DNA of 36,977 bases from assembly GCF_001194135.2 (NCBI RefSeq), contig NC_068996.1, positions 35,292,312-35,329,288 of the forward strand, read 5' to 3'. Source of the DNA: Octopus bimaculoides (lineage: Eukaryota). How positions within the stretch are numbered: position 1 is the first letter of the stretch; the number at the start of each line of letters is the position of its first letter. The notes under the pieces were generated by a model. It worked only from the letters and a program-made list of their open reading frames with translations, did no database searches and was not told where the DNA came from. Below are positions 4,498 through 32,769 of this stretch, piece after piece. Made by a program: the position numbers and the translations under genes.

Positions 4498-5681
4498 GTT
4501 ATTCTCTATATTTATTTGTGTGTGAACCCTACTTGTATTCTTCATATTACGTCCCTGTAAACTAGCGACCCTTCAGGCCGTGCCCCAGTATGACCGCAAT
4601 CCAACGACTGGAAAAAGTAAGAGATAAAAGGTCCTATCTCTGTCAATAGACAACAAAGATAGGTTCTCTGCTTGCGAACCTATCTCTGTTGGCAGTGACG
4701 GGTTCGCAACAGAGACTTGCAGTGATCAGCTCATCCTTCCAATAAATCTAAGATTAACTGGAATTCTAATCACCAGTAATCGCCTAGCGTCTTGCACCCT
4801 TTGGATAAAGCCCCCTATTACAATACAATAGCTGCCAGTTAACGGCGGGAAAAAAAAAGATTAAAAGAAAGAGAAAATGAAGGAAGGAAAGAAATGAAAC
4901 TATTCTCAGAGCGTTGAAGCGTGTTATGAGCACACCATTCTACTTATTCTAATTGAGACACGAGTTTAGGAAGATACAATCACACCCTCTCGTACGTACA
5001 CAGGTTGCCAAAGACCTTCATATGAACACCAATTATTGACTCACACACACATACACACACTTTTACATAGATAACGTGTATACAGTTGAATACGCCTATT
5101 TTCATAAAATGATCATAGAGTGGAGATAAGCACGTGGTGGAGCCCACCCACTCTCACCTCTATCTCTTTTTTCACCTTCTCTCTCTCACAACACACACGC
5201 ACGCACGCACGCACGGAAAATACATCTTCACCAGATAACGTTCTTTCTAAGATATATTTCTTGTACATTATCATGAATAAATTGTTAAAGCATTTTAGAT
5301 AAGATTAAACGTTTGCTCTTTCTTTTCATAACGAAAACACACAACAGTCACTAAAAGCACATACATACATACGCATATTATTTTATACACGTATTCATGA
5401 ACATTAAATCTGATCAGATTTGGATAGCGAGCAGAATCTCAATGGGTGAATGTACGGTTCACCACAGCTCAGAGGGAGAAAGTGGCAGGAGGTGCATAAT
5501 TACACTTGGATTTCATTGTTATTTGCAGCCCCCAGAAAGTTTTTTTTTTCCAATCTCTGGTTGATGAGCACAGGAAGTTTCTGTGCCGAATGTAGGTCTT
5601 GGCAACAAAATTGTTTATCAATGTTACTTAGGAGAAACAGTTGCTGGCTGGCAGAAAGCCTAAGTGTTGTTGGATTAAAAT

Positions 5682-6068
5682 GCAAGGCGTGGCTATGTGG
5701 TAAGAAGTTTACTTCCTAACCACATGGTTCTAGGTTCAGTCCCACTGCATATCACCATGGGCAAGTATTATGCATTACAGCCTCGGGCCAAACAAAGCCT
5801 TATGAGTGGATTAGTAGACGGAAACTGAAAGAATCCCGTCGTTTATGTATGTGTATTTGTGTTATCCTCTTCTCAACGCTTGACAACCGATGTTGGTCTT
5901 TTTATGTCCTTGTGATGTAGTTGTTCAGCAAAATGAGACCGATAGAATAAGTGCCAAGTTTAGTAATTAAAAAATAAGTACTGGGCTTGATTTGTTCGAC
6001 CAAAACCTTCAGGTTGAAGCCCTAGCGTGACCACAGTCTAGTGGCTGAAAGAAGTAAATGATAAAAGA
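5682..6068 (+). mobile_element. tRNA-derived SINE family A (tRNA head, CORE-like segment, central microsatellite, tail 1), full length
   Basis: A-box-like TGGCTATGTGG and B-box-like GGTTCAGTCCC. Collinear with at least 8 other copies in the window. Confidence 0.85.
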
Positions 6069-9168: not shown

Positions 9169-9361
9169 AAGAGGATCTATGAAGAGCTCAATCATAACTT
9201 CTAAAGTCTATCACTATCAATATATGTTTTCTTTTTAAGCCTGATACTTATTCTATCAGTCTCTTTTGCCGAACCACTATTTTACGGGGACGTAAACACT
9301 GGTTATCAGCGGGAGGGGCAAACACACACACACACACGTGAAGCAACAAAAATTCAATAGG

Positions 9362-9456
9362 TTATAGCAGTACGTACGTTTCGTACAAGCTCCATTTATT
9401 CATGTGGTGAGAACACCACAGAATGTACAATGAAAATGTACTCCTCAGCTGCATAA
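9362..9456 (-). ncRNA. Type I hammerhead ribozyme, mirror copy
   Basis: Reverse-complement arm of the palindrome. Identical core, stem I and stem III. The stem II tip TGTGGTG/CACCACA is fully Watson-Crick. Predicted cleavage between 9371 and 9370. Confidence 0.9.
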
Positions 9457-9466
9457 TGGAATTTCA

Positions 9467-9561
9467 TTATGCAGCTGAGGAGTACATTTTCATTGTATTT
9501 TCTGTGGTGTTCTCACTACATGAATAAATGGAGCTTGTACGAAACGTACGTACTGCTATAA
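9467..9561 (+). ncRNA. Type I hammerhead ribozyme (minimal, Penelope-type)
   Basis: Stem I TTAT-GCAG (9467-9474) pairs with CTGC-t-ATAA (9553-9561). Core CTGAGGA 9475-9481. Stem II GTACA/TGTAC is extended by TTCATT/AATGGA, TATT/AATA and TGTGGTG/CACTACA. GAAA 9541-9544. Stem III is one C-G pair around the palindromic loop GTAC. GTA triplet, with predicted cleavage after 9552. Confidence 0.9.
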
Positions 9562-10169
9562 CCTATTGAATTTTTGTTGCTTAACTTCAAATTTTATTCA
9601 CCAAATTTCTTGATTTTGTTTTTGGTTTTTATCCTACCAAATTCTGGTGCCTCAAGCATTTTAAGTACCACATTTAATCTTTTGATTAAATCGATATTAT
9701 TATATATAAATATATATACGGACTTTCAGTTTCCGTCTACCAAATCCACTCAGTAGGATTTGGTCGGCCCGTGGCTATAGTGGAAGAGACCCGCCCAAGG
9801 TGCCATGCAGTTGGGCTGAACCCAGAACCATGTGGTTGGGAAACAAACTTCTTACCATACAGCCGTATATGTGTATATATGTACACACATACACATTCAC
9901 GCATCTAACAGAACACACAGGTGTACACGTGTATGTTTATGTTTGTAATGAATATCAGAAATCATATTCATGTAAATCTATTCAATCCAACCAGTAATAA
10001 TATTGACTAAAAATTTTGTTATTCGAATATTCCTTTCCTGGAATTTACTCATATCTATGGTCCTTTCACCTTCAGATGTATAAATACGTTGTAATTCCCA
10101 AATGGCTCTAGTCAGGTTCAACTCTTTAAAACATATTGATCTTGTTGCATGGAGTTTAATCATGTTCAT

Positions 10170-11260
10170 CTAAACAGACACTTGATGAATACAGCTTTTC
10201 AGAGTAAATAGAATGGAAATGAGAGGACATGAATGGGGTTAAGTAGCGTTTTATGGAACACAGTGAAATATAAAAGGAGTGAGGGGGGAATGTTTAGAGC
10301 GGAAAGAAGAGTAATGTACGACAGAGAGAGAGAGGGGAGAGAAAGAGAGAGTCTAGACACAATCAGAGAGGCGGAAGAAAGACTACACTGTACTTTGGGA
10401 GATGAGGAACACATTGTGAAAGGAGTGTTTACAATAGAAGGAAGAGTAGAAAGCGAATAAAGAAATAAGTAGTGGGAGAAGAGTATCAGAGTAAGTAGAG
10501 AGAGGAGCTAGAGGAGAATGTATAGAGAGAAATAGTGAGAAGTGTTCATTGTAGAAGGCAGAGTAAATTGTATAGAAAAGCAAGTATGATTACAAACAGA
10601 AATAGGTAGTGAGAGGAGTGTATTAAGAAATTACACTTGATCATGGGAGTGAAAGTAAATTATTCAGAAAATAAGTAAAAGCAGACGGTTCAAGATAAGG
10701 AAGAGTAGAGTGTACGGACGTGGTAGCAATAAGTATATGAGAGTGAAAGTAACGTGTTCAGAGTGACTGTACGAGGAAGCCACATAATAAAAGGGAGTGA
10801 AAATAACGTGTTCTGCGGGCATGGCAGTATATAGTGAACTAGAGGGAGGGTGAGTAAGAGTGGACTCGGTGGAGGAGTAGGCAGAGTGAAGTGTTTAGAG
10901 AAGGGCGAATGTAAAAGAAAGAGAAATAAATGAAAGTAGATTATTAGTATTTTTAGGAGAAAGATATAGAGTGAATAAGAGAGGGGTAGCGTCAGAGAGT
11001 GATCGAGTGATAAAAGTACGAGAGTGGAATATATGGAGAGGCATGAGTGATGGCTGATAGCGGGAGTTAGAGAAGGGTAAAATAGACGAGAACCGGGGAA
11101 GGTGGGGAAGCAAGCAAAATAATACGGAAGAGAAAAGGGGATTTAGGTGGTTTAAATTTAGAATGGTTATTCGTTTGGATTAGAATTAATGAATTAATAT
11201 GTAAATCTGTAGTGGAGATTATCAGAGCTGGACAAGAAATGTGAATCATTTCAAGATGAC
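10170..11260 (-). mobile_element. Possible very old L2/CR1-like LINE remnant
   Basis: The minus strand is strongly pyrimidine-rich. Faint ordered motifs LSDATPLLFTL, YNEHFSLFLSIHSPL and FTVFHKTLLNP resemble L2 SDH..L.F, YN..L...LD.HAPL and LF.TF..LLNP. The similarity is weak. Confidence 0.3.
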
Positions 11261-12689
11261 TAAATCGTGAAAGGAGAGAAAAAAGAAATTTTTTTTTAAA
11301 GAACGCGGAGGAGGGGTGAAGGAAAATGACGTAGGGAAAAAGAAAAGGAAAAGTTAGAAATAAATACGGAGAAAGTCATAAAGAAAGAAAAAATAAAGAC
11401 GAAAAAAAAGGAAAGAATGTAGTATAGGAATGATATCATCGTGTTATGATGGAATGAGAGAGAATGGTAACGTAGATGATGTCGGGGAATGCTATGAGAG
11501 GCTGTTTCTTACTATTTGCATCGCACCTACATATATACAAACACGCACGCACACACACATATATAGTTAGACATCATCTAATAAACATCGGCAACAAAAA
11601 TCAATATACAGAACAAGTGGCCAAAACAGAAAAACAACCTCTTAAGAGACGGGAAAGAGAAAGAGAGAGAGGGGGCAGGGGAGACAGAAAACGTGGGTGT
11701 AAAGAGACTCCTTAAGAAGCGATAGGAACGTGATAATACTCCACATGACTGTAAGAACTGCTGGATATATCTATCTTGATGGAGTCTCTATGTGGTCTAT
11801 TTGACCTGCGAAATACAATTGTCAAATATTCTTCACATCACTTCCTACTGTTTTTTAAAATAAGACACTTTAGATAATGATACACTGTACCAGAAAAGAA
11901 ACGAAATGGTAAGGTCACTGTTGGAACATCTTTGAAAGTATATCTACTGGATCAGGACTGAATCTAGGGATAGGGTTTAATTCCCACTACTACCCACATT
12001 CACCACCATCACCAATATAGAATGTGCTAGAATTTGCCCACATATTTCAATACAGTAGTGATGGAAATATGTTTCTTATGACTTAGTGGTGGAGGAGGGG
12101 GGGATCAACAGCCATAATTTTTTGTAAGGTTTCCAAAACCAGCAAGGAAATGACAGATGAAACCAAGTGTGATGAGTTAATTGCAGGCCAAAGGCTTGGT
12201 GTGGATGTTTTCCACAGAGAATGCGACTCAAGGTACCGATGAAGCAAATGGTGATGCTAAACAGGGAGACGGATTAATTCTACCATCCAGGAAGACATAC
12301 AGTCCCTCCAGATAGATTTTTCTCAAAGTTTCTATCAAATTTCATCCACAAGTCTTTGGACAACCTGAAGATATGGTAGAAATCACTTACTTGTTCTGGG
12401 TGTCAGTCTAGAATGAAACAAGAAGTCATGCGGTTGGGTTGTAAAGTAAATTTCACCTTTCACACCTACCCAGCAATGCCATTCTAAAACTAAACAATCA
12501 CATCATTGAAATCTCAAAGCTATGAGATAATTCATGATTGATTCAAAACAATGTCAATGAATAAGCATTACATTTGACAGAGTAATCTGAATGCTTAAAG
12601 GGTTAAACATACATCTATGACTGTACCTCATTAGCATTCAGTTTAAATAAGCACTTTATCACTTTTAATTAAGCACTTAGTTAGCTTTC

Positions 12690-13547: not shown

Positions 13548-13808
13548 CTTGAGAAGACCTGTCAAGCCAAGTGAAACCATAGTCATGGCAGATACTGGTG
13601 TCATGCAACTGGCACCCATACCAGTGGTACGTTAAAGCATCTATTACCTTCTTGGGGTTGTTGGTGTTAGGAAGGGCATCCAGCTGTAGAAAACGATGCC
13701 AAATCGGACTGGAGTCTGGTGCAGCCCCTCAGCTTACCAATCCTGATCAAACCATTGAACCCATGGCAGCATGGACAATAGACGCTAAATGATGATGATA
13801 ATGATGAT
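13548..13808 (+). mobile_element. Older RTE-type LINE 3' end
   Basis: CTTGAGAAGACC...TTAGGAAGGGCATCCAGCTGTAGAAA...TAAATGATGATG. Confidence 0.75.
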
Positions 13809-16770: not shown

Positions 16771-17518
16771 TGCTTGTTTTCCTCCAATGCACTCCTACCC
16801 ACCCTGACATCTGAATGTTGTCATGCCATGAGTCACTCTCTGAAGGTACAAGTATTGCTGGCTCATGCAGGGACATGCAACATGCATGGTGTGCTCAGTC
16901 ATACACACACACACATTTCTATACACTAATAATATACTCCTCCTCTTTCTCAGCTTCCCTCTATTTCCGTTTAGAAAATACTCCACCTCCTAATCAATGA
17001 ATGAGGGAGAGGGAAACAGGTAAAGTGAGAGAGAGAGAGAAACCAGACAGACAGACAGGGCAAGGGCATGTCTACAGAGTGTGTTCATGCTCCTTTGAAT
17101 GGTGATATACTCTTGCAAATGGTTCCAGATTCCATAATAAGAGGAACATGGAAATTATTTTAGTTTGTTCTGTTTTGTACATAGTATTTATTTTTATTTA
17201 AATTCTTGTCGTTTTCCGGAAATTAATTTAGTTTCCTCAACTGTAAACAACGTTTATTTTTATGTTTGTTTAAATTAAAATAATTATAATAATAATGATA
17301 ATAATAATAATAATAATAATAATAACCATGATAATATTTCTAGATTAATATTATTTGCTCTCTTTCTCTTGTTTTGTACAATGATTATTAATAAAAATAT
17401 TGTTGTTGTATAAAATAATTACAACTGTGACTAAACAAAATCTATATAAAATGGAATAGAAAGCATTTTAACAACATCAATTACAACTTGTTTTTGATAA
17501 GTCACTTTAATAATAATA

Positions 17519-17745
17519 TCGTTTAACGTCCGCTTTCCATGCTAGCATGGGTTGGACGATTTGACTGAGGACTGGCGAACCAGATGGCGGCACCAGGCTC
17601 CAATCTGATCTGGCAGAGTTTCTACAGTTGGATGCCCTTCCTAACGCCAACCACTCCGAGAGTGTAGTGGGTGCTTTTATGTGCTACTGGCATGAGGGCC
17701 AGTCAGGCGGTACTGGCAACGGCCATGCTCAAATGGTGTTTTCAT
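17519..17745 (-). mobile_element. Young RTE-type LINE 3' end
   Basis: Reverse complement of the 24277 and 29663 copies. Confidence 0.85.
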
Positions 17746-19560: not shown

Positions 19561-19584
19561 ACAATGGTGAATATAATATATAAG

Positions 19585-20235
19585 CGCAGATGTGGCTGTG
19601 TAGTAAGAAGTTTGCTTCCCAACTACATCATTCCAGGTTCAGTCCTACTGCATGGCACCTTGAGCCAGTGTCTTTTACTATAGCCTCAGACTGAAGAAAG
19701 CCTTGTGTATAGATTTGGTAGATGGAAACAGAAAGAAGCCTATCATANNNNNNNNNNNNNNNNNNNNNNNNNNNNNNNNNNNNNNNNNNNNNNNNNNNNN
19801 NNNNNNNNNNNNNNNNNNNNNNNNNNNNNNNNNNNNNNNNNNNNNNNNNNNNNNNNNNNNNNNNNNNNNNNNNNNNNNNNNNNNNNNNNNNNNNNNNNNN
19901 NNNNNNNNNNNNNNNNNNNNNNNNNNNNNNNNNNNNNNNNNNNNNNNNNNNNNNNNNNNNNNNNNNNNNNNNNNNNNNNNNNNNNNNNNNNNNNNNNNNN
20001 NNNNNNNNNNNNNNNNNNNNNNNNNNNNNNNNNNNNNNNNNNNNNNNNNNNNNNNNNNNNNNNNNNNNNNNNNNNNNNNNNNNNNNNNNNNNNNNNNNNN
20101 NNNNNNNNNNNNNNNNNNNNNNNNNNNNNNNNNNNNNNNNNNNNNNNNNNNNNNNNNNNNNNNNNNNNNNNNNNNNNNNNNNNNNNNNNNNNNNNNNNNN
20201 NNNNNNNNNNNNNNNNNNNNNNNNNNNNNNNNNNN

Positions 20236-20296
<61 letters not shown>

Positions 20297-20490
20297 CTGT
20301 GTTTGTCGCCCTACCATCGCTTGACAACCGATGCTGGTGTGTTTAGGTCCCCGTAACTTAGCAGTTTGGCAAAAGAACCAATCAATAGAATAAGTACTAG
20401 GCTTACAAAGAATAAGTCCTGGGGTCAATTTGGTCGACTAAAGGCAGTGCTCCAGCATGGCCACAGTCAAATGACTGAAACAAGTAAAAT
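19585..20490 (+). mobile_element. SINE family A with a gap in the central microsatellite
   Basis: Head at 19585-19747 and tail at about 20290-20490. Confidence 0.85.
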
Positions 20491-20678: not shown

Positions 20679-21112
20679 TTTATTTATTTATTCTTTTACA
20701 TGTTTCAGTCATTTGATTGTGGCTATGCTGGAGTACCACCTTAAAGGGGTTTAGTTGAAGAAATCTTCCCCAGGACTTATTTTCTGTAAGCCTAGTACTT
20801 ATCCTATCGGTCTCTTTTCTCTTTTGCCTCACATGGTGGGAGGACAAACACACACACAAAGACATACACACACATAAATATATATATGTATATATATACG
20901 ATGGGCTTCTTTCAGTCTCTGTCTACCAATTCCACTCACAAGCATTTAGTTAGCCCGAAGCTATTGTAGAAGACACTTGCCCAAGGTGCTACACAACAGG
21001 ACTGAACCCAGAACCATGTGGTTGGGAAGCAAGCTTCTTACCACACAACCATGCCTGTGTCTATCCGCACAGCTACACCTGTGCCTATCCACACAGCCAT
21101 GCCTGCACCTAT
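20679..21112 (-). mobile_element. SINE family A with triplicated 24-nt 5' end
   Basis: Full body on the minus strand. 24-nt units at 21041-64, 21065-88 and 21089-112. Confidence 0.85.
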
Positions 21113-21359: not shown

Positions 21360-21706
21360 CACAATTAGAATGCTGGACCTTATGAAGGAGATGGCTGAGG
21401 ACTGAGATATGTTGTGAATTGCTGTACTCAAGAAGACCTGCCCACCACAACAGAAATGAGATGCTAAAACCAAGGTGTGGGTTCTGGTACCACATAAAAA
21501 GTATTGGTGATGATGCCACATACACACGTACCCAGTATAATCTGTGGAGTAGTTGGTGTTCGGAAGTGCATCTAGCTGCAGAAACCAAACCATAAACAGA
21601 CTATGAAACTTGGTATGGACCCTGACCTTGCCAGTCCCAGTCAAGCTGTCCAACCCATGCCAGCATGGAAAATAGATGTTAAATGTTGATGATGATGATG
21701 ATGATT
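21360..21706 (+). mobile_element. RTE-type LINE 3' end including ORF terminus
   Basis: IRMLDLMKEMAED*DML*IAVLKKT, a decayed DR..WR terminus, followed by the shared 3' UTR and (GAT)n. This links the UTR family to a LINE. Confidence 0.7.
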
Positions 21707-23716: not shown

Positions 23717-24089
23717 TGTGTATGTATGTATGTGTGTGTGTGTGTGTATGTTTGCATACATACATGATCGTGTCGGTAAAATATATATATATTTATGTTT
23801 ATGCATGATTGTTGCACATATGCGTGCATATGCATATAAATTCGTCACATTTTCTAGGGCTTCCTTTATCTGTAAAAACGTCGATTTGATGAGTGCTTGC
23901 CTATGGCTTTATAGCTGATCATAATTCTTCCTGTCCAACGTATTTTGAATGCCATCCATCGAATCATATGTAGAAGATACGAAGAGATAAATGTGTTAAT
24001 AACATCCTAAGCATTTGTCTCCTATTTCAATGTATCCTATATATATATTTAAGAATTTAAGGATTGGAGAAAACACATGTTATAATTGC

Positions 24090-24186
24090 ATACTTTATTC
24101 CTACATATGTTTCAAAGGATTACAACCTGTGTGATCCATAGGGATCTTTGATATTAAAATTGTAACCTTCTCATCAGGGAAAGCAT
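24090..24186 (-). ncRNA. Type I hammerhead ribozyme, second unrelated family
   Basis: Minus strand: TTCC, core CTGATGA (24177-24171), stem II GAAGG-TTACAA...TTGTAA-t-CCTTT with inner GATCC/GGATC hairpin (24133-24146), GAAA, C[ATAT]G, TA, then GGAA closing stem I. GTA triplet, cleavage between 24102 and 24101. The G10.1-C11.1 pair is G-U here. Confidence 0.8.
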
Positions 24187-24276: not shown

Positions 24277-24442
24277 ACTCTCGGAGTGGTTGGCGTTAGG
24301 AAGGGCATCCAGCTGTAGAAACTCTGCCAAATCAGATTGGAGCCTGGTGTAGCCATCTGGTTTCACCAGTCCTCAGTCAAATCGTCCAACCCATGCTAGC
24401 ATAGAAAGCGGACGTTAAACGATGATGATGATGATGATGATG

Positions 24443-24503: not shown

Positions 24504-25692
24504 CAGGGTGTGGTGAATATATTGTCGTGTAAATTATGAAAATGTAAAAATAAGACTGACATCTCATTTTAACAGATATATTCACCAAAATTATATAAGA
24601 ATATATTGAAATAGTAAAGAGTAAATTTATTCAATAAAACCGCCATAGGCTTCTACCATGGCCTCCAGACGACTTCGGAATCTCCTGCAACTCTTCTGGA
24701 CGGTCTCCTTATTTAAGTCGGTCAATGCTGCGATAATCCTTCCCTGCAGTTCATCTTTGGTGTTAAAAGGACTTTTGTTGGTCTTTCAAAGGGGTTCCAG
24801 TCTGAGGATTTAAGTGGCCGGATGTTAGGGGGTGATGTGGTCACAGAAATTGTCTGATAGCCATGACTGGGTTCCCCTGCTTGTGCAGCATGATGCAGAG
24901 TCCTGTTGCCAGACATAGGGTCTTCCAGTAAGTCACCCTCTTCCCCCAGGGCAATGCTACTTCCTCCAAGCACTTGATGTCGGCCTCTGAGTCGAGTATG
25001 AAGCTGTGTGGGAAAAGAAGATGAATGGAGGCATAACGTGGCCATCACTAGTGATCTCTCCAAGCACCATGATGTTGACTGGCTGTTTGATTTTTATCAC
25101 TCTCGTTACATGTTTTGGGGACATGGCAAGCCAACGGATGTCCTGCGTGTTCCCCATCTGATTCCTGGCAGAAGATTTTCTTGTCTGTGATAAACCAAAG
25201 CATGTTCGGTTGGAGGGGATGCTTGAGTTTGTTCAAAATTTTCTTAGCACAGTCTTTCCTCTTGTTCTTGATGGCTTGGGATAAAACTTCGCCCTTCCTC
25301 ATCTTGTATGAGGAATATCGAATTTCCTCATGCACTATCTGCCTGATAAGCAACTCAGACACTCTCATGGACCTGATTAACTTGATTAACAGGAGTTCTT
25401 TTCTTATCACAACGATCAGATTGAGTTTTCCGAGCTGCTGTACTTTTGTAATCTCCATTAGACTCATCCAACTCTTTCTGAATCTTCTGCAGTGACCTCA
25501 GATTCACACCCAAACCACCCTGAAATGTTCGTATTGGCGCTTCCAGTAAGAATGCCAAGCAGAACAGCATGTCGTTTCCAAGTTTCCCAACTCACCCTCC
25601 TATACAGTGCAGTTGACAAAATAAAAGAACAAACAATGTGAATGTGAGAAATCAAAAATATAAAACGGCGACAATCTTCCCATTGCAACCTG
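24504..25692 (-). mobile_element. Tc1/mariner transposon (maT/DD37D-like), pseudogenised transposase
   Basis: TA target sites at 24502-03 and 25693-94. Imperfect TIRs CAGGGTG..ATTGTCG and CAGGTTG..ATTGTCG. Minus-strand peptides include YKMRKGEVLS, LNKLKHPLQPNMLWFITDKKIFCQ, WLAMSPKHV, IMVLGEITSDGHVMPPFIF and SSDWNPF. There are frameshifts and a 3' deletion. The subfamily call is less certain than the superfamily call. Confidence 0.9.
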
Positions 25693-26509: not shown

Positions 26510-26676
26510 AGGTTCAGGTGTGGCTGTACGCTAAGAAGCTTGCTTCCAAACCGCATGGTTCTGGGTTCAGTCCCACTGCGTGGCACACTTCGACAAGTGC
26601 CTTCTACTATAGCCCCTGGCCAACCAAAACCTTGTAAGTGGATTTGGTAGACGGAAACTGAAAAAAGCCTGTCGTA

Positions 26677-26711
<35 letters not shown>
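26510..26711 (+). mobile_element. SINE family A head, running into a gap
   Basis: TGGCTGTACGCTAAG...GGTTCAGTCCCACTGCG...GTAGACGGAAACTG. Confidence 0.85.
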
Positions 26712-27239
26712 NNNNNNNNNNNNNNNNNNNNNNNNNNNNNNNNNNNNNNNNNNNNNNNNNNNNNNNNNNNNNNNNNNNNNNNNNNNNNNNNNNNNNNNNN
26801 NNNNNNNNNNNNNNNNNNNNNNNNNNNNNNNNNNNNNNNNNNNNNNNNNNNNNNNNNNNNNNNNNNNNNNNNNNNNNNNNNNNNNNNNNNNNNNNNNNNN
26901 NNNNNNNNNNNNNNNNNNNNNNNNNNNNNNNNNNNNNNNNNNNNNNNNNNNNNNNNNNNNNNNNNNNNNNNNNNNNNNNNNNNNNNNNNNNNNNNNNNNN
27001 NNNNNNNNNNNNNNNNNNNNNNNNNNNNNNNNNNNNNNNNNNNNNNNNNNNNNNNNNNNNNNNNNNNNNNNNNNNNNNNNNNNNNNNNNNNNNNNNNNNN
27101 NNNNNNNNNNNNNNNNNNNNNNNNNNNNNNATATATATATATATATAGGTAGATAGATAGATAGATATATAGATAGATACTTATAGAAACTTATTTGGAA
27201 GAGGATGCGTGGTGTTCAATCATATAATAATATAAAATA

Positions 27240-29170: not shown

Positions 29171-29662
29171 NNNNNNNNNNNNNNNNNNNNNNNNNNNNNN
29201 NNNNNNNNNNNNNNNNNNNNNNNNNNNNNNNNNNNNNNNNNNNNNNNNNNNNNNNNNNNNNNNNNNNNNNNNNNNNNNNNNNNNNNNNNNNNNNNNNNNN
29301 NNNNNNNNNNNNNNNNNNNNNNNNNNNNNNNNNNNNNNNNNNNNNNNNNNNNNNNNNNNNNNNNNNNNNNNNNNNNNNNNNNNNNNNNNNNNNNNNNNNN
29401 NNNNNNNNNNNNNNNNNNNNNNNNNNNNNNNNNNNNNNNNNNNNNNNNNNNNNNNNNNNNNNNNNNNNNNNNNNNNNNNNNNNNNNNNNNNNNNNNNNNN
29501 NNNNNNNNNNNNNNNNNNNNNNNNNNNNNNNNNNNNNNNNNNNNNNNNNNNNNNNNNNNNNNNNNNNNNNNNNNNNNNNNNNNNNNNNNNNNNNNNNNNN
29601 NNNNNNNNNNNNNNNNNNNNNNNNNNNNNNNNNNNNNNNNNNNNNNNNNNNNNNNNNNNNNN

Positions 29663-29897
29663 GGCACATAAGGGACACCATTTCGAGCGTGGCTGTTTTC
29701 GTGCGGGTGACACGTAAAAGCACCCACTACACTCTCTGAGTGGTTGGCGTTAGGAAGGGCATCCAGCTGTAGAAACTCTGCCAAATTAGATTGGAGCCTG
29801 GTGTAGCCATCCGGTTGCACCAGTCCTCAGTCAAATCGTCCAACCCATGCTAGCATGGAAAGCGGACGTTAAACGATGATGATGATGATGATGATGA
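29663..29897 (+). mobile_element. Young RTE-type LINE 3' end
   Basis: Same 3' UTR and (GAT)n tail. The 5' side runs into a gap. Confidence 0.85.
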
Positions 29898-31258: not shown

Positions 31259-31560
31259 ATTATTCATTATCATCATCATTTGACATCTGCCTTCCATGCT
31301 GGCATGGGTTAGATGGTTTGACAGGAGCTGGCCTGGCAGAAGACTGCACCATGCTCTTGTGTCTGCTTTAGCATGATTTTTCATGGCTGGATGCCTTTTG
31401 TAACACCAATCATTCAGCAGAGTGGACTGAATGCTTTTTACATGGTACCAACACAAGCAAGGTCAGTTTTGGTATGGTTTTTACAGCTGGATGCTCTTCC
31501 AAATGCCAACCACCTTAAAGCGTGGACTGGATGCTTTTTAAGTGGCAGGGTCACCAAGTA
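31259..31560 (-). mobile_element. RTE-type 3' end with internal tandem duplication
   Basis: The GCTGGATGC...ACCA..CA...GAGTGGACTG.ATGCTTTTTA segment occurs twice. A (CAT)n tail is on the left. Confidence 0.65.
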
Positions 31561-31790: not shown

Positions 31791-32769
31791 ATATATGTGC
31801 AGATGTACACACACACATGTATGCATGCACTCACATATGCACACACAGACACATTACTGAATAATTAAGAATGCTTGTTATGTATAGTGAAGTCAGGCAC
31901 AAGCAATGAAAATGTACTCAATACATAGAATCTAATGTTGGATTAGTTGTTTAACAAGGAAATCTCTTTCAAGTCACTGAGTACATTTTCTAAATGTTTC
32001 ATTTTAAAAGATAAAATCTTTGGTAAATTTTTTTCATTGGAACACATCAGTTACTCTCAGGAGTAACACTATTCACTCAGCTGCTGTAATTCTATAAGTA
32101 CAGAACCGAAAGTATTTCATCACCATTTTGTGCTCCCATTCACCCTTCCTGGTATCACTTTCTTTGTTTCTTACATTCTCAGCGTCATTCCTTACCGTCT
32201 TATTTTCTGCTGAATGCCCCTTTACGTCCATTGTTTCCTTTTACACTCTCTCATTCTACTAATGGTGTTCCCCACTACTCATGTATGTTTCCTACTATTT
32301 CCATCCCTATGTACCTCTGACCTTGTACTTGGCACTGTGTATCTTTTACACACTGTCCACATGCCACATCATCTGTGCTGCCATCCATTACTTCCCTGTC
32401 CCTATCCTATTTCCTCTATCTTTCCTCCTCCAAACTGGTATTCATCATTGACCGCACCTCTATTCATGTTCACCATTCACTGCCTTTGCCTTTTTTCCCC
32501 CATCTCTATCCATTTACCACTACCCTTTCACACTCTCACAAACTTGCCTACTCACTCACCCAGTCTAATTCTCTGGACCATTTCTCTTGCATTCACCTTC
32601 TTGTAATATGAAGGAATACCTTGATAGCTCTCGTCCATCTTCTCTCCTTTTCCATTTGGAGTAGCCACATATTTTCTTCACAGCAAGAAACATGTTCCTG
32701 TCCTTCTGCCATACTTTAACAGCTCATCACCTGGCATAAAGCCACCTCCCTCAATACTGCACCCGTCTC

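What the first reader, a model, noticed from the sequence alone, without database searches (positions are those of the whole stretch)
9341..9582. Two intact hammerhead ribozymes head-to-head in a 242-bp palindrome
Seen: each 121-bp arm contains a complete type I hammerhead (stem I, CUGAGGA, long stem II, GAAA, C[GUAC]G, GUA cleavage site), one on each strand, with 5' ends meeting at the centre and only 4 mismatched pairs between arms. Established: Penelope-like retroelements carry minimal type I hammerheads in their pseudo-LTRs, often with a palindromic stem III loop that allows dimeric cleavage, and they often leave inverted pLTRs (Cervera and de la Pena 2014). Inferred: this is a young inverted pLTR or a non-autonomous ribozyme cassette that could cut a read-through transcript from either strand. 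The class is known; this family, its roughly 60-nt stem II and the zero-spacer geometry may be undescribed.
Basis: partly seen in the sequence, partly recalled or inferred. Interest (0 to 1): 0.9.

Follow-up and report, generated by a model that had tools for sequence, protein, structure and literature searches.

The report
Inverted pair of Penelope-type hammerhead relics
A real 242-bp perfect-centre palindrome carries one intact minimal hammerhead ribozyme motif on each strand, but it looks like an ordinary relic of a Penelope-like/retrozyme-type retroelement inserted head-to-head into a microsatellite, not a new kind of ribozyme device.

Summary
Arms 9341-9461 and 9462-9582 are reverse complements with 4 mismatches and no spacer. 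Each carries a complete type I hammerhead: CUGAGGA, a 59-nt helix II domain, GAAA, C[GUAC]G, and GUA with a cut after 9552 (+) or 9371 (-). A min-HHR descriptor finds it on both strands, plus a third unrelated motif at 24098-24181. It finds nothing in 50 Mb of random sequence. Rfam Hammerhead_1 aligns full-length but scores below its threshold (18.9 vs 34 bits). The motif is of the dimer-only Penelope-like-element (PLE) type, and the predicted homodimer MFE is the classical double hammerhead. The palindrome plus about 113 nt on its right is an insertion into the (CA)n/(TA)n microsatellite of a SINE-like repeat. This matches published PLE habits: microsatellite targets, 5' truncation, adjacent inverted copies, and an extension at one end. 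No RT or GIY-YIG ORF was detected in the 37 kb window. A read-through transcript would fold into a 121-bp hairpin (-207 kcal/mol; P(HHR) about 1e-84), so cutting read-through RNA from either strand is not supported. Opposite-strand min-HHR pairs and inverted PLE copies are already published. No other copies could be retrieved, so copy number, covariation and RT linkage remain untested. Verdict: a new member of a known kind, of low interest.

The parts
9341..9582 (.). 242-bp zero-spacer palindrome (two 121-nt arms, 4 mismatched pairs)
9462..9582 (+). right arm: sense copy of the HHR-bearing unit on the + strand
9341..9461 (-). left arm: sense copy of the same unit on the - strand
9471..9556 (+). 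minimal type I hammerhead. Helix I is GCAG/CUGC, extendable by 4 bp past a bulged U9557. The core is CUGAGGA 9475-9481 and GAAA 9541-9544. Helix III is C9545-G9550 with loop GUAC. The predicted cut is after A17 = 9552.
   Evidence: Rfam RF00163 full-length alignment; descriptor hit; constrained fold
9367..9452 (-). mirror-image hammerhead on the - strand. The core CUGAGGA is the reverse complement of 9442-9448, and GAAA is the reverse complement of 9379-9382. The predicted cut is after 9371.
9482..9540 (+). 59-nt helix II domain. A 5-bp closing helix (G10.1-C11.1, U-A, A-U, C-G, A-U) is followed by an imperfect rod ending in an 11-bp hairpin (UGUGGUG-UUCU-CACYACA plus AUUC/GAAU). Three of the four arm differences lie here, and one is G-C to G.U.
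9583..9695 (+). about 113 nt of T-rich sequence that is also absent from 'empty' copies of the host repeat. It is part of the same insertion, present on one side only. It may be the 3' continuation or 'tail' of the right-hand unit, or the 5' part of a - strand unit. The right boundary is uncertain by about 7 nt because it lies in (TA)n.
   Evidence: alignment with empty SINE-like copies; no other copy in the window
9205..9337 (-). left half of the interrupted SINE-like repeat A, ending in its internal (CA)n tract (9318-9337), which abuts the palindrome
9696..9900 (-). right half of the interrupted SINE-like repeat A, starting with its internal (TA)n tract

Best explanation
The locus is a relic retroelement insertion. 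A short HHR-bearing unit was inserted by target-primed reverse transcription into the (CA)n/(TA)n microsatellite inside a SINE-like repeat. The unit was either the 3'-terminal part of a Penelope-like element or a non-autonomous, retrozyme-like derivative of a pLTR.

The inverted duplicate arose at integration, in one of two ways:
(a) The RT reached the 5' end of its template at the position equivalent to 9462, snapped back and copied 121 nt of its own cDNA.
(b) Both cut target strands primed cDNA on two RNAs with the same 5' end. The cDNAs started at two alternative internal start sites, which would explain the about 113-nt extension on one side only.

Each arm keeps an intact minimal type I hammerhead that can only become active as a double hammerhead. 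That structure needs an 8-bp intermolecular helix III (ACGUACGU) and crossed helix I.

In its present context the pair is not a working self-cleaving device. Read-through RNA becomes a 121-bp hairpin. Only arm-only transcripts at high concentration could cleave in trans.

Shown: the motif, the palindrome, the insertion site, the absence of an ORF and the folding energetics. Inferred: PLE parentage, the formation mechanism and the lack of current function.
For: - The core and all helices are intact on both strands.
- Chance is excluded: 0 hits in 50 Mb of random sequence and 0 in 300 shuffles, against 3 hits in the window.
- The motif matches the published PLE min-HHR traits: G10.1-C11.1, an enlarged helix II, a short helix I, and palindromic 15.2-16.2 and loop 3 (PMC4209133).
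- The homodimer MFE (-60.8 kcal/mol, ddG -9.4 relative to two monomers) is exactly the double hammerhead. The monomer HHR fold is 7-10 kcal/mol above the MFE.
- Alignment with four uninterrupted copies of the host repeat shows the insertion lies between its (CA)n and (TA)n tracts and spans 9338/9341 to about 9695.
- Published PLE biology fits. PMC8557442 describes microsatellite insertion bias, heavy 5' truncation, an adjacent inverted 5'-truncated copy, and a tail at one end. PMC11167929 reports that the PLE protein cleaves and extends both target strands and uses two internal RT start sites. PMC4209133 reports most min-HHRs as solitary motifs and some as opposite-strand pairs. The 2026 bioRxiv preprint 10.64898/2026.07.22.740005 reports that non-LTR retrozymes derive from pLTRs.
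- A second, unrelated solitary min-HHR-like motif lies next to a (TA)n tract in the same 37 kb. This points to a genome rich in such elements.
Against: - No RT or GIY-YIG domain was detected among stop-to-stop ORFs >=50 aa of the window (low-complexity and gap-spanning ORFs left out). The PLE link is therefore architectural only.
- No other copy of the family could be retrieved. Multi-copy status, common termini and covariation are untested.
- The one-sided extension is about 113 nt, whereas the published tail is 30-40 bp.
- No target-site duplication is visible, as expected in microsatellites.
- The inner ends of the arms (9462) are not the HHR cleavage site (9552/9553), so HHR processing did not define the template's 5' end.
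- Rfam's gathering score is not reached.
- Exactly equal arms need a special explanation: snap-back or a fixed RNA 5' end.
Confidence: 0.65

Rival explanations
1. Hairpin-RNA locus. The inverted duplication matters as a source of a 121-bp dsRNA hairpin. The hairpin would be diced into endo-siRNAs, and/or A-to-I edited, and would silence transcripts of the same HHR-bearing retroelement family. In that reading the hammerheads are passengers.
For: - The read-through transcript folds into an almost perfect 121-bp hairpin on either strand (-209 / -202 kcal/mol).
- Generic long-hairpin miRNA models align to it.
- Three of the four arm differences are same-direction transitions. This would be compatible with editing of an RNA intermediate, but four sites prove nothing.
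- From my own knowledge, inverted TE duplications acting as silencing triggers are known, for example Mu killer in maize and Drosophila hpRNAs.
Against: All miRNA family matches are far below gathering scores and merely reflect any long hairpin. There is no evidence of transcription, no conservation data, and no small-RNA data. Any young inverted repeat would look like this.
Confidence: 0.12
2. One reading: an active double ribozyme cassette that cleaves host read-through transcripts from either strand.
For: The catalytic core and all three helices are intact on both strands.
Against: - The equilibrium probability of the HHR fold in a transcript spanning both arms is about 1e-84. Nascent RNA pairs from the centre outward.
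- The monomer HHR fold is 7-10 kcal/mol above the MFE.
- This HHR type showed no monomer cleavage and only weak dimer cleavage in vitro (PMC4209133).
- The two copies are on opposite strands, so no intramolecular dimer can form.
Confidence: 0.04
3. Assembly or library fold-back artefact. The palindrome is not present in the organism's genome.
For: The window is a draft scaffold with 8 N-gaps. Several of them sit at the same microsatellite of other copies of the host repeat, so this kind of site assembles poorly. Zero-spacer palindromes are a classic chimeric-read artefact, and PMC8557442 notes that PLE structures confuse short-read assemblies.
Against: The arms differ at 4 positions (3.3%), which a fold-back of one molecule would not give. 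The two flanks are the two halves of one interrupted repeat in the correct order and orientation. There is no N-gap within 5.7 kb.
Confidence: 0.07
4. Real hammerhead motif, but not PLE-borne. In this reading it is either a later DNA-level inverted duplication (fold-back repair at a break in the microsatellite) of a solitary retrozyme-like monomer, or a foldback/MITE-type DNA element that happens to carry the motif.
For: No RT/EN is detected in the window. There are no tandem direct repeats. Equal arms with zero spacer are what DNA hairpin-capped repair gives.
Against: The microsatellite target, the one-sided extension and the inverted-copy architecture all match published PLE insertions (PMC8557442, PMC11167929). 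Type I min-HHRs with palindromic helix III are so far tied to PLEs and their derivatives (PMC4209133, 10.64898/2026.07.22.740005).
Confidence: 0.12

Closest known systems
Minimal type I hammerheads of Penelope-like elements (Cervera & de la Pena 2014, PMC4209133; Lunse, Weinberg & Breaker 2017, cited via PMC6765202)
   Same: It has the complete core, G10.1-C11.1, a short open helix I (4 bp plus extension), an enlarged helix II, and a 1-bp helix III with a palindromic loop, so only a dimer gives a stable helix III. It occurs as a dispersed ORF-less copy. Opposite-strand pairs 100-700 bp apart were already noted in Schistosoma mansoni.
   Different: The helix II domain is 59 nt, against the 7-8 bp stems described. 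There is no unpaired nucleotide between A9 and 10.1. The two copies abut with zero spacer. No PLE ORF is nearby, and family membership by homology could not be tested.
PLE insertion architecture: pLTR, partial tandems, adjacent inverted 5'-truncated copy, one-sided 'tail', microsatellite targets (Craig et al. 2021, PMC8557442; PAc in vitro system 2024, PMC11167929)
   Same: It is a head-to-head inverted pair with 3' ends outward. It is inserted in a (CA)n/(TA)n tract, has an extra stretch on one side only, and shows no discernible TSD. The HHR lies near the 3' end of the unit.
   Different: The arms are only 121 nt and exactly equal. The one-sided extension is about 113 nt rather than 30-40 bp. 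No full-length partner or ORF is present.
Metazoan non-LTR retrozymes (Cervera & de la Pena 2020, PMC7229834; Li, Clavereau & Pollet 2026 preprint 10.64898/2026.07.22.740005)
   Same: It is a short (about 120-235 nt) AT-rich ORF-less unit carrying a type I HHR. Monomeric derivatives are common, and the family derives from PLE pLTRs.
   Different: Retrozymes are defined by head-to-tail tandem repeats that yield circRNAs. Here there is no direct repeat at all. The HHR is also the minimal type rather than the classical type with loop-loop contacts.
Double-hammerhead of newt satellite 2 and ASBVd (Forster et al. 1988, cited in PMC4209133)
   Same: The predicted homodimer MFE has an intermolecular helix III and crossed helix I, with both cores unpaired.
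   Different: In those systems the two copies are on the same strand, in tandem. Here they are on opposite strands, so dimerisation would have to occur in trans.
Inverted-duplication silencing triggers and hpRNA loci (e.g. Mu killer, Drosophila hpRNAs; from my own knowledge, not checked here)
   Same: It is a long, near-perfect hairpin made from an inverted duplication of part of a transposable element.
   Different: There is no evidence of transcription or small RNAs.

Membership tests
Type I hammerhead ribozyme (Rfam RF00163, clan CL00010) | Conserved core C3 U4 G5 A6 N7 G8 A9 ... G12 A13 A14, the A15.1-U16.1 pair, and H17 at the cleavage site | tested here: met
   CUGAGGA 9475-9481, GAAA 9541-9544, U9551 and A9552 are identical in both arms
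Type I hammerhead ribozyme (Rfam RF00163, clan CL00010) | Three helices around the core with helix I open (type I topology), and G10.1-C11.1 | tested here: met
   Rfam alignment covers model positions 1-45 of 45; descriptor hits; constrained fold
Type I hammerhead ribozyme (Rfam RF00163, clan CL00010) | Score at or above Rfam's gathering threshold (34 bits) | tested here: not met
   It scores 18.9 bits, with E = 0.022 to 0.055 in local searches and no hit at gathering threshold. A 51-nt insert sits in the helix II loop; I infer that this lowers the score, but did not test it.
Type I hammerhead ribozyme (Rfam RF00163, clan CL00010) | Site-specific self-cleavage | not testable with these tools
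   This needs in vitro transcription.
PLE-type minimal hammerhead (Cervera & de la Pena 2014) | Very short helix III with self-complementary 15.2-16.2 and loop 3, giving a dimeric active form | tested here: met
   C[GUAC]G is present. ACGUACGU is an 8-nt palindrome. The homodimer MFE is the double hammerhead, with ddG -9.4 kcal/mol.
PLE-type minimal hammerhead (Cervera & de la Pena 2014) | Enlarged helix II and a short helix I (4-5 bp) without loop-loop contacts | tested here: met
   Helix I has 4 bp, with 4 more past a bulge. The helix II domain is 59 nt, longer than described.
PLE-type minimal hammerhead (Cervera & de la Pena 2014) | [quoted passage not shown] | tested here: not met
   G9482 directly follows A9 and pairs with C9540 as 10.1-11.1.
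PLE-type minimal hammerhead (Cervera & de la Pena 2014) | Located in the pLTR of an element encoding RT + GIY-YIG (true of a minority of genomic copies) | tested here: not met
   Pfam scans of the window's stop-to-stop ORFs >=50 aa (low-complexity and gap-spanning ORFs left out) gave no family at E <= 0.01.
PLE-type minimal hammerhead (Cervera & de la Pena 2014) | Multi-copy consensus family with covariation in the helices | not testable with these tools
   There were no matches in viral, metagenome or prokaryotic genome contigs. ORFs from the arms are not in the protein collection. The source genome is not available.
PLE insertion architecture | Inverted truncated copy abutting another copy, with 3' ends outward | tested here: met
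PLE insertion architecture | Insertion into microsatellite DNA | tested here: met
   The insertion lies between the (CA)n and (TA)n tracts of an interrupted SINE-like repeat. Empty copies were aligned for comparison.
PLE insertion architecture | 30-40-bp 'tail' at one end, corresponding to two RT start sites | tested here: inconclusive
   A one-sided extension exists (9583-~9695), but it is about 113 nt and its relation to the unit is unproven.
Metazoan non-LTR retrozyme | Head-to-tail tandem repeats, each with a type I HHR | tested here: not met
   There are no direct repeats around the locus, and no tandem array was found by TRF.
miRNA / hairpin RNA gene | Match to a curated precursor family, or small-RNA evidence | tested here: not met
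   All miRNA model hits score 25-50 bits against gathering scores of 70-160, and they are explained by the palindrome alone. Small-RNA data are not available.

The most novel reading that the evidence does not exclude
The head-to-head double hammerhead may itself be the mobile or selected unit. One possibility is a 'foldback retrozyme' family whose RNA carries the hairpin, with the about 113-nt segment as its 5' part on the - strand. It would either use the hairpin in priming or integration, or act as a self-generated hpRNA trigger that regulates the parent PLE family. The unusually long (about 57-59 nt) helix II domain, also seen in the unrelated motif at 24098-24181, would then be a lineage-specific functional feature.
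Probability: 0.07. Interest if true: 0.6.

Novelty: new member of a known kind. Interest (0 to 1): 0.2.

Why it matters
The finding matters only modestly.

- It is a clean, datable example (3.3% arm divergence) of a Penelope-type minimal hammerhead pair. An 'empty site' is available in the same window, which fixes the insertion boundaries and the microsatellite target.
- The exact zero-spacer symmetry and the one-sided extension are the footprints expected if PLE integration involves RT snap-back or priming from both target strands. That step has so far been seen only in vitro (PMC11167929).
- For annotation, the locus should be labelled a retroelement relic or inverted repeat, not a ribozyme gene.
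- If the source genome proves rich in long-helix-II min-HHRs (two independent loci in 37 kb), that family would be worth adding to hammerhead models. Rfam's model scores it below threshold.

Tried and rejected
- Rfam at gathering threshold on the whole window found nothing. Local E-value searches were needed to see Hammerhead_1.
- The strong miRNA-family hits were rejected as generic long-hairpin matches. All are below gathering score and disappear when one arm is searched alone.
- A 16-nt match of the arm at 31904-31919 was inspected. There is no motif and no inverted repeat there, so it was treated as chance.
- I searched for other copies:
  - The family-specific gapped pattern gave 0 hits in viral, metagenome and prokaryote-genome contigs.
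  - SINE 23- and 24-mers gave 0 hits in the metagenome, genome and viral collections.
  - Sequence strings gave 0 hits in the paper library.
- I tried to name the organism:
  - Exact look-up of 10 window ORFs found none in the collection.
  - A homology search with the transposase-looking ORF gave one unnamed 52% ENA hit.
  - ARAGORN found no tRNA.
My impression that the SINEs look cephalopod or mollusc-like is memory only and was not used.
I replaced it with concatenated stop-to-stop ORFs.
- The two HHR-bearing units in the window were compared for homology. The best local score equals the shuffle mean, so they belong to different families.
- Lunse et al. 2017 (PMC5785218) is not held and was cited only through reviews.

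Full report
**1.

The repeat finder reports arms 9338-9461 and 9462-9585, 96% complementary with 0 nt between them. A base-by-base comparison gives 121-nt arms (9341-9461 and 9462-9582) with exactly four mismatched pairs: 9464/9459, 9498/9425, 9499/9424 and 9517/9406.

On the + strand the right arm reads as a complete type I hammerhead:
- helix I 5': GCAG, 9471-9474
- core: CUGAGGA, 9475-9481
- helix II domain: 59 nt, 9482-9540, closed by GUACA/UGUAC with G10.1-C11.1
- GAAA: 9541-9544
- helix III: C9545, loop GUAC, G9550
- U16.1: 9551
- A17: 9552
- helix I 3': CUGC, 9553-9556

The left arm is the mirror image on the - strand, with the cut after 9371. All four arm differences lie outside the core and the closing helices. 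One of them (9517) changes a G-C pair to G.U in the terminal hairpin of helix II.

**2. The motif is more than chance.**

Rfam finds nothing at gathering threshold in the whole window. In local E-value searches, Hammerhead_1 (RF00163) aligns over model positions 1-45 of 45 on both strands. It scores 18.9 bits against a gathering score of 34, with E = 0.022 for a single arm. A 51-nt insertion sits in the helix II loop.

The higher-scoring miRNA-family hits are generic long-hairpin matches. All are below their gathering scores, and they vanish when one arm is searched alone.

I wrote a descriptor for the published minimal HHR: CUGANGA, helix II, GAAA, a 1-bp helix III with a self-complementary loop, UH, and helix I of at least 4 bp. 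The results were:
- It hits both arms and a third locus, 24098-24181 on the - strand.
- It gives 0 hits in 300 dinucleotide shuffles of the window.
- It gives 0 hits in 50 Mb of Markov-1 random sequence of the same composition.
- A relaxed descriptor returns the same three hits against 0.02 expected per window.

Two independent loci in 37 kb therefore indicate a genome rich in such motifs. This fits the 'massive and widespread occurrence' reported for metazoans (PMC4209133).

**3. What kind of hammerhead it is.**

The motif has the traits that Cervera and de la Pena list for PLE min-HHRs (PMC4209133):
- G10.1-C11.1
- a short open helix I
- an enlarged helix II
- palindromic 15.2-16.2 and loop 3

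As a monomer, the HHR fold is not the minimum. The HHR-constrained energies are -21.5 and -22.0 kcal/mol, against MFEs of -28.7 and -31.6.

Co-folding two copies gives an MFE of -60.8 kcal/mol, 9.4 kcal/mol better than two monomers. That structure is exactly the double hammerhead. Both cores are unpaired, the 8-nt palindrome ACGUACGU forms an intermolecular helix III, and helix I is crossed between the molecules. The motif is thus dimer-dependent, as published for this class. The published in vitro work found no monomer cleavage and only weak dimer cleavage (PMC6765202).

**4. Context.**

The window is a eukaryotic draft scaffold. It has 8 N-gaps, dozens of microsatellites and no long ORFs.

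BLAST of the flanks against the window and an alignment with other copies show that the palindrome sits inside one copy of a SINE-like repeat. Uninterrupted copies run body - (CA)n(TA)n - head (for example 5660-5990 on the - strand). At this locus the body ends in (CA)n at 9337, and the head resumes with (TA)n at about 9696.

The inserted DNA is therefore 9338/9341 to about 9695. It comprises the 242-bp palindrome plus about 113 nt of T-rich sequence on the right side only. That extra stretch has no other copy in the window. No target-site duplication can be read in the microsatellite.

Pfam scans of the window's stop-to-stop ORFs >=50 aa (low-complexity and gap-spanning ORFs left out) find no family at E <= 0.01. 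No RT or GIY-YIG domain is therefore detectable. There are no direct or tandem repeats of the unit.

**5. Comparison with published biology.**

- PLE insertions are heavily 5'-truncated and often have an inverted 5'-truncated copy immediately adjacent. They often carry a 30-40-bp tail at one end only, prefer (CA)n/(TA)n microsatellites so that TSDs are unreadable, and carry the HHR near the 3' end (PMC8557442).
- In vitro, a Poseidon PLE protein cleaves and extends both target strands. It also starts reverse transcription at two internal sites, and the interval between them is the tail (PMC11167929).
- Most min-HHRs are solitary. Some occur as opposite-strand pairs 100-700 bp apart (PMC4209133).
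- Non-LTR retrozymes, including monomeric derivatives, descend from pLTRs (bioRxiv 10.64898/2026.07.22.740005).

Every structural feature of this locus fits that picture. The exceptions are the length of the one-sided extension and the exact equality of the arms.

A zero spacer requires both arms to end at the same template position (9462). That follows automatically in two cases. In the first, the RT snaps back on its own cDNA. In the second, two RNAs with the same 5' end are copied from the two target strands. I cannot choose between these without other copies. The inner ends are not the ribozyme cleavage site, so HHR processing did not define the template's 5' end.

**6. Function now.**

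A transcript that spans both arms folds into a 121-bp hairpin (-209 / -202 kcal/mol). With the right-arm HHR enforced, the ensemble energy is -87.8 against -207.3 kcal/mol, giving log10 P of about -84. Partial transcripts show that the hairpin zips from the centre before helix II can close.

The two motifs are on opposite strands, so they cannot make the tandem dimer. The idea that the cassette cuts read-through transcripts from either strand is therefore not supported. Only arm-only transcripts, for example divergent ones, could meet in trans. Nothing suggests a promoter for such transcripts.

The likeliest present state is an inert relic. A hairpin-RNA role is a minor possibility.

**7. What could not be done.**

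- The family-specific pattern gave no hit in viral, metagenome or prokaryote-genome contigs.
- Probes from the host SINE-like repeats gave none either.
- None of 10 window ORFs is in the protein collection.
- A transposase-looking ORF has a single unnamed 52% homologue.
- ARAGORN finds no tRNA.
- Sequence strings are absent from the paper library.

As a result, copy number, covariation, RT linkage and the organism's identity remain open. An assembly artefact is unlikely, given the four arm differences and the correctly ordered halves of the host repeat. It cannot be excluded without reads.

**8. Verdict.**

The locus is a new member of a known kind. Its mild curiosities are the 59-nt helix II domain, the exact zero-spacer symmetry and the available empty site. 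Interest is about 0.2.

Noticed in passing
window 24098-24181 (- strand): A third, solitary minimal hammerhead-like motif: UUCC-CUGAUGA, a 57-nt helix II domain, GAAA, C[AUAU]G, UA, GGAA. It belongs to a different sequence family from the palindrome arms (no similarity outside the core). It has a G10.1.U11.1 wobble and is not reported by Rfam even at E <= 10. It lies beside a (TA)n tract at 24040-24052 and next to a SINE-like repeat B copy. It shares the long-helix-II architecture with the palindrome motif.
   Followed up: partly
window 5691-5952(-), 19576-19735 + 20287-20412(-), 20787-21064(+), 26522-26692(-), 36718-36930(-) and others: SINE-like repeat A has at least 10 partial copies and an internal (CA)n(TA)n microsatellite. 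Several assembly N-gaps (19748-20235, 26712-27130, 29171-29662) fall exactly at or next to that microsatellite. Other copies could therefore hide insertions or expansions that the assembler could not resolve. ARAGORN sees no tRNA-like head, so tRNA derivation is not shown.
   Followed up: partly
window 24277-24425, 29731-29879, 17518-17663(-), 13650-13795, 21546-21689, 31273-31423(-): A second SINE-like repeat (B), starting GGAAGGGCATCCAGCTGTAGAAAC. Three copies are 95-97% identical, which suggests recent activity, and there are older copies. The 24-mer gave no match in the prokaryote-genome or viral contig collections.
   Followed up: partly
window 10200-11500: A tract of about 1.3 kb that is purine-rich and almost free of C on the + strand (GC skew +0.5, AT skew +0.23). 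It has no clear tandem period. Its nature is unknown.
   Followed up: no
window 24600-25520 (- strand): Several adjacent ORF fragments look like a decayed DNA-transposon transposase. This is my reading only. Pfam gives no hit, and the only database homologue is an unnamed 190-aa ENA protein at 52% identity.
   Followed up: partly
window 9464, 9498, 9517 versus 9459, 9425, 9406: Three of the four arm differences are transitions in the same direction: T in the right arm where the complement of the left arm has C. Equivalently, this is A-to-G on the + strand of the left arm. There are too few sites to interpret, but this is the direction expected from A-to-I editing of a hairpin RNA intermediate.
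   Followed up: no
window 9469-9561 (+) and 9362-9454 (-): Each arm contains a 30-codon ATG ORF that starts in helix I and runs through the whole hammerhead (MQLRSTFSLY...). Neither sequence is in the 15-billion-protein collection. They are probably meaningless.
   Followed up: yes
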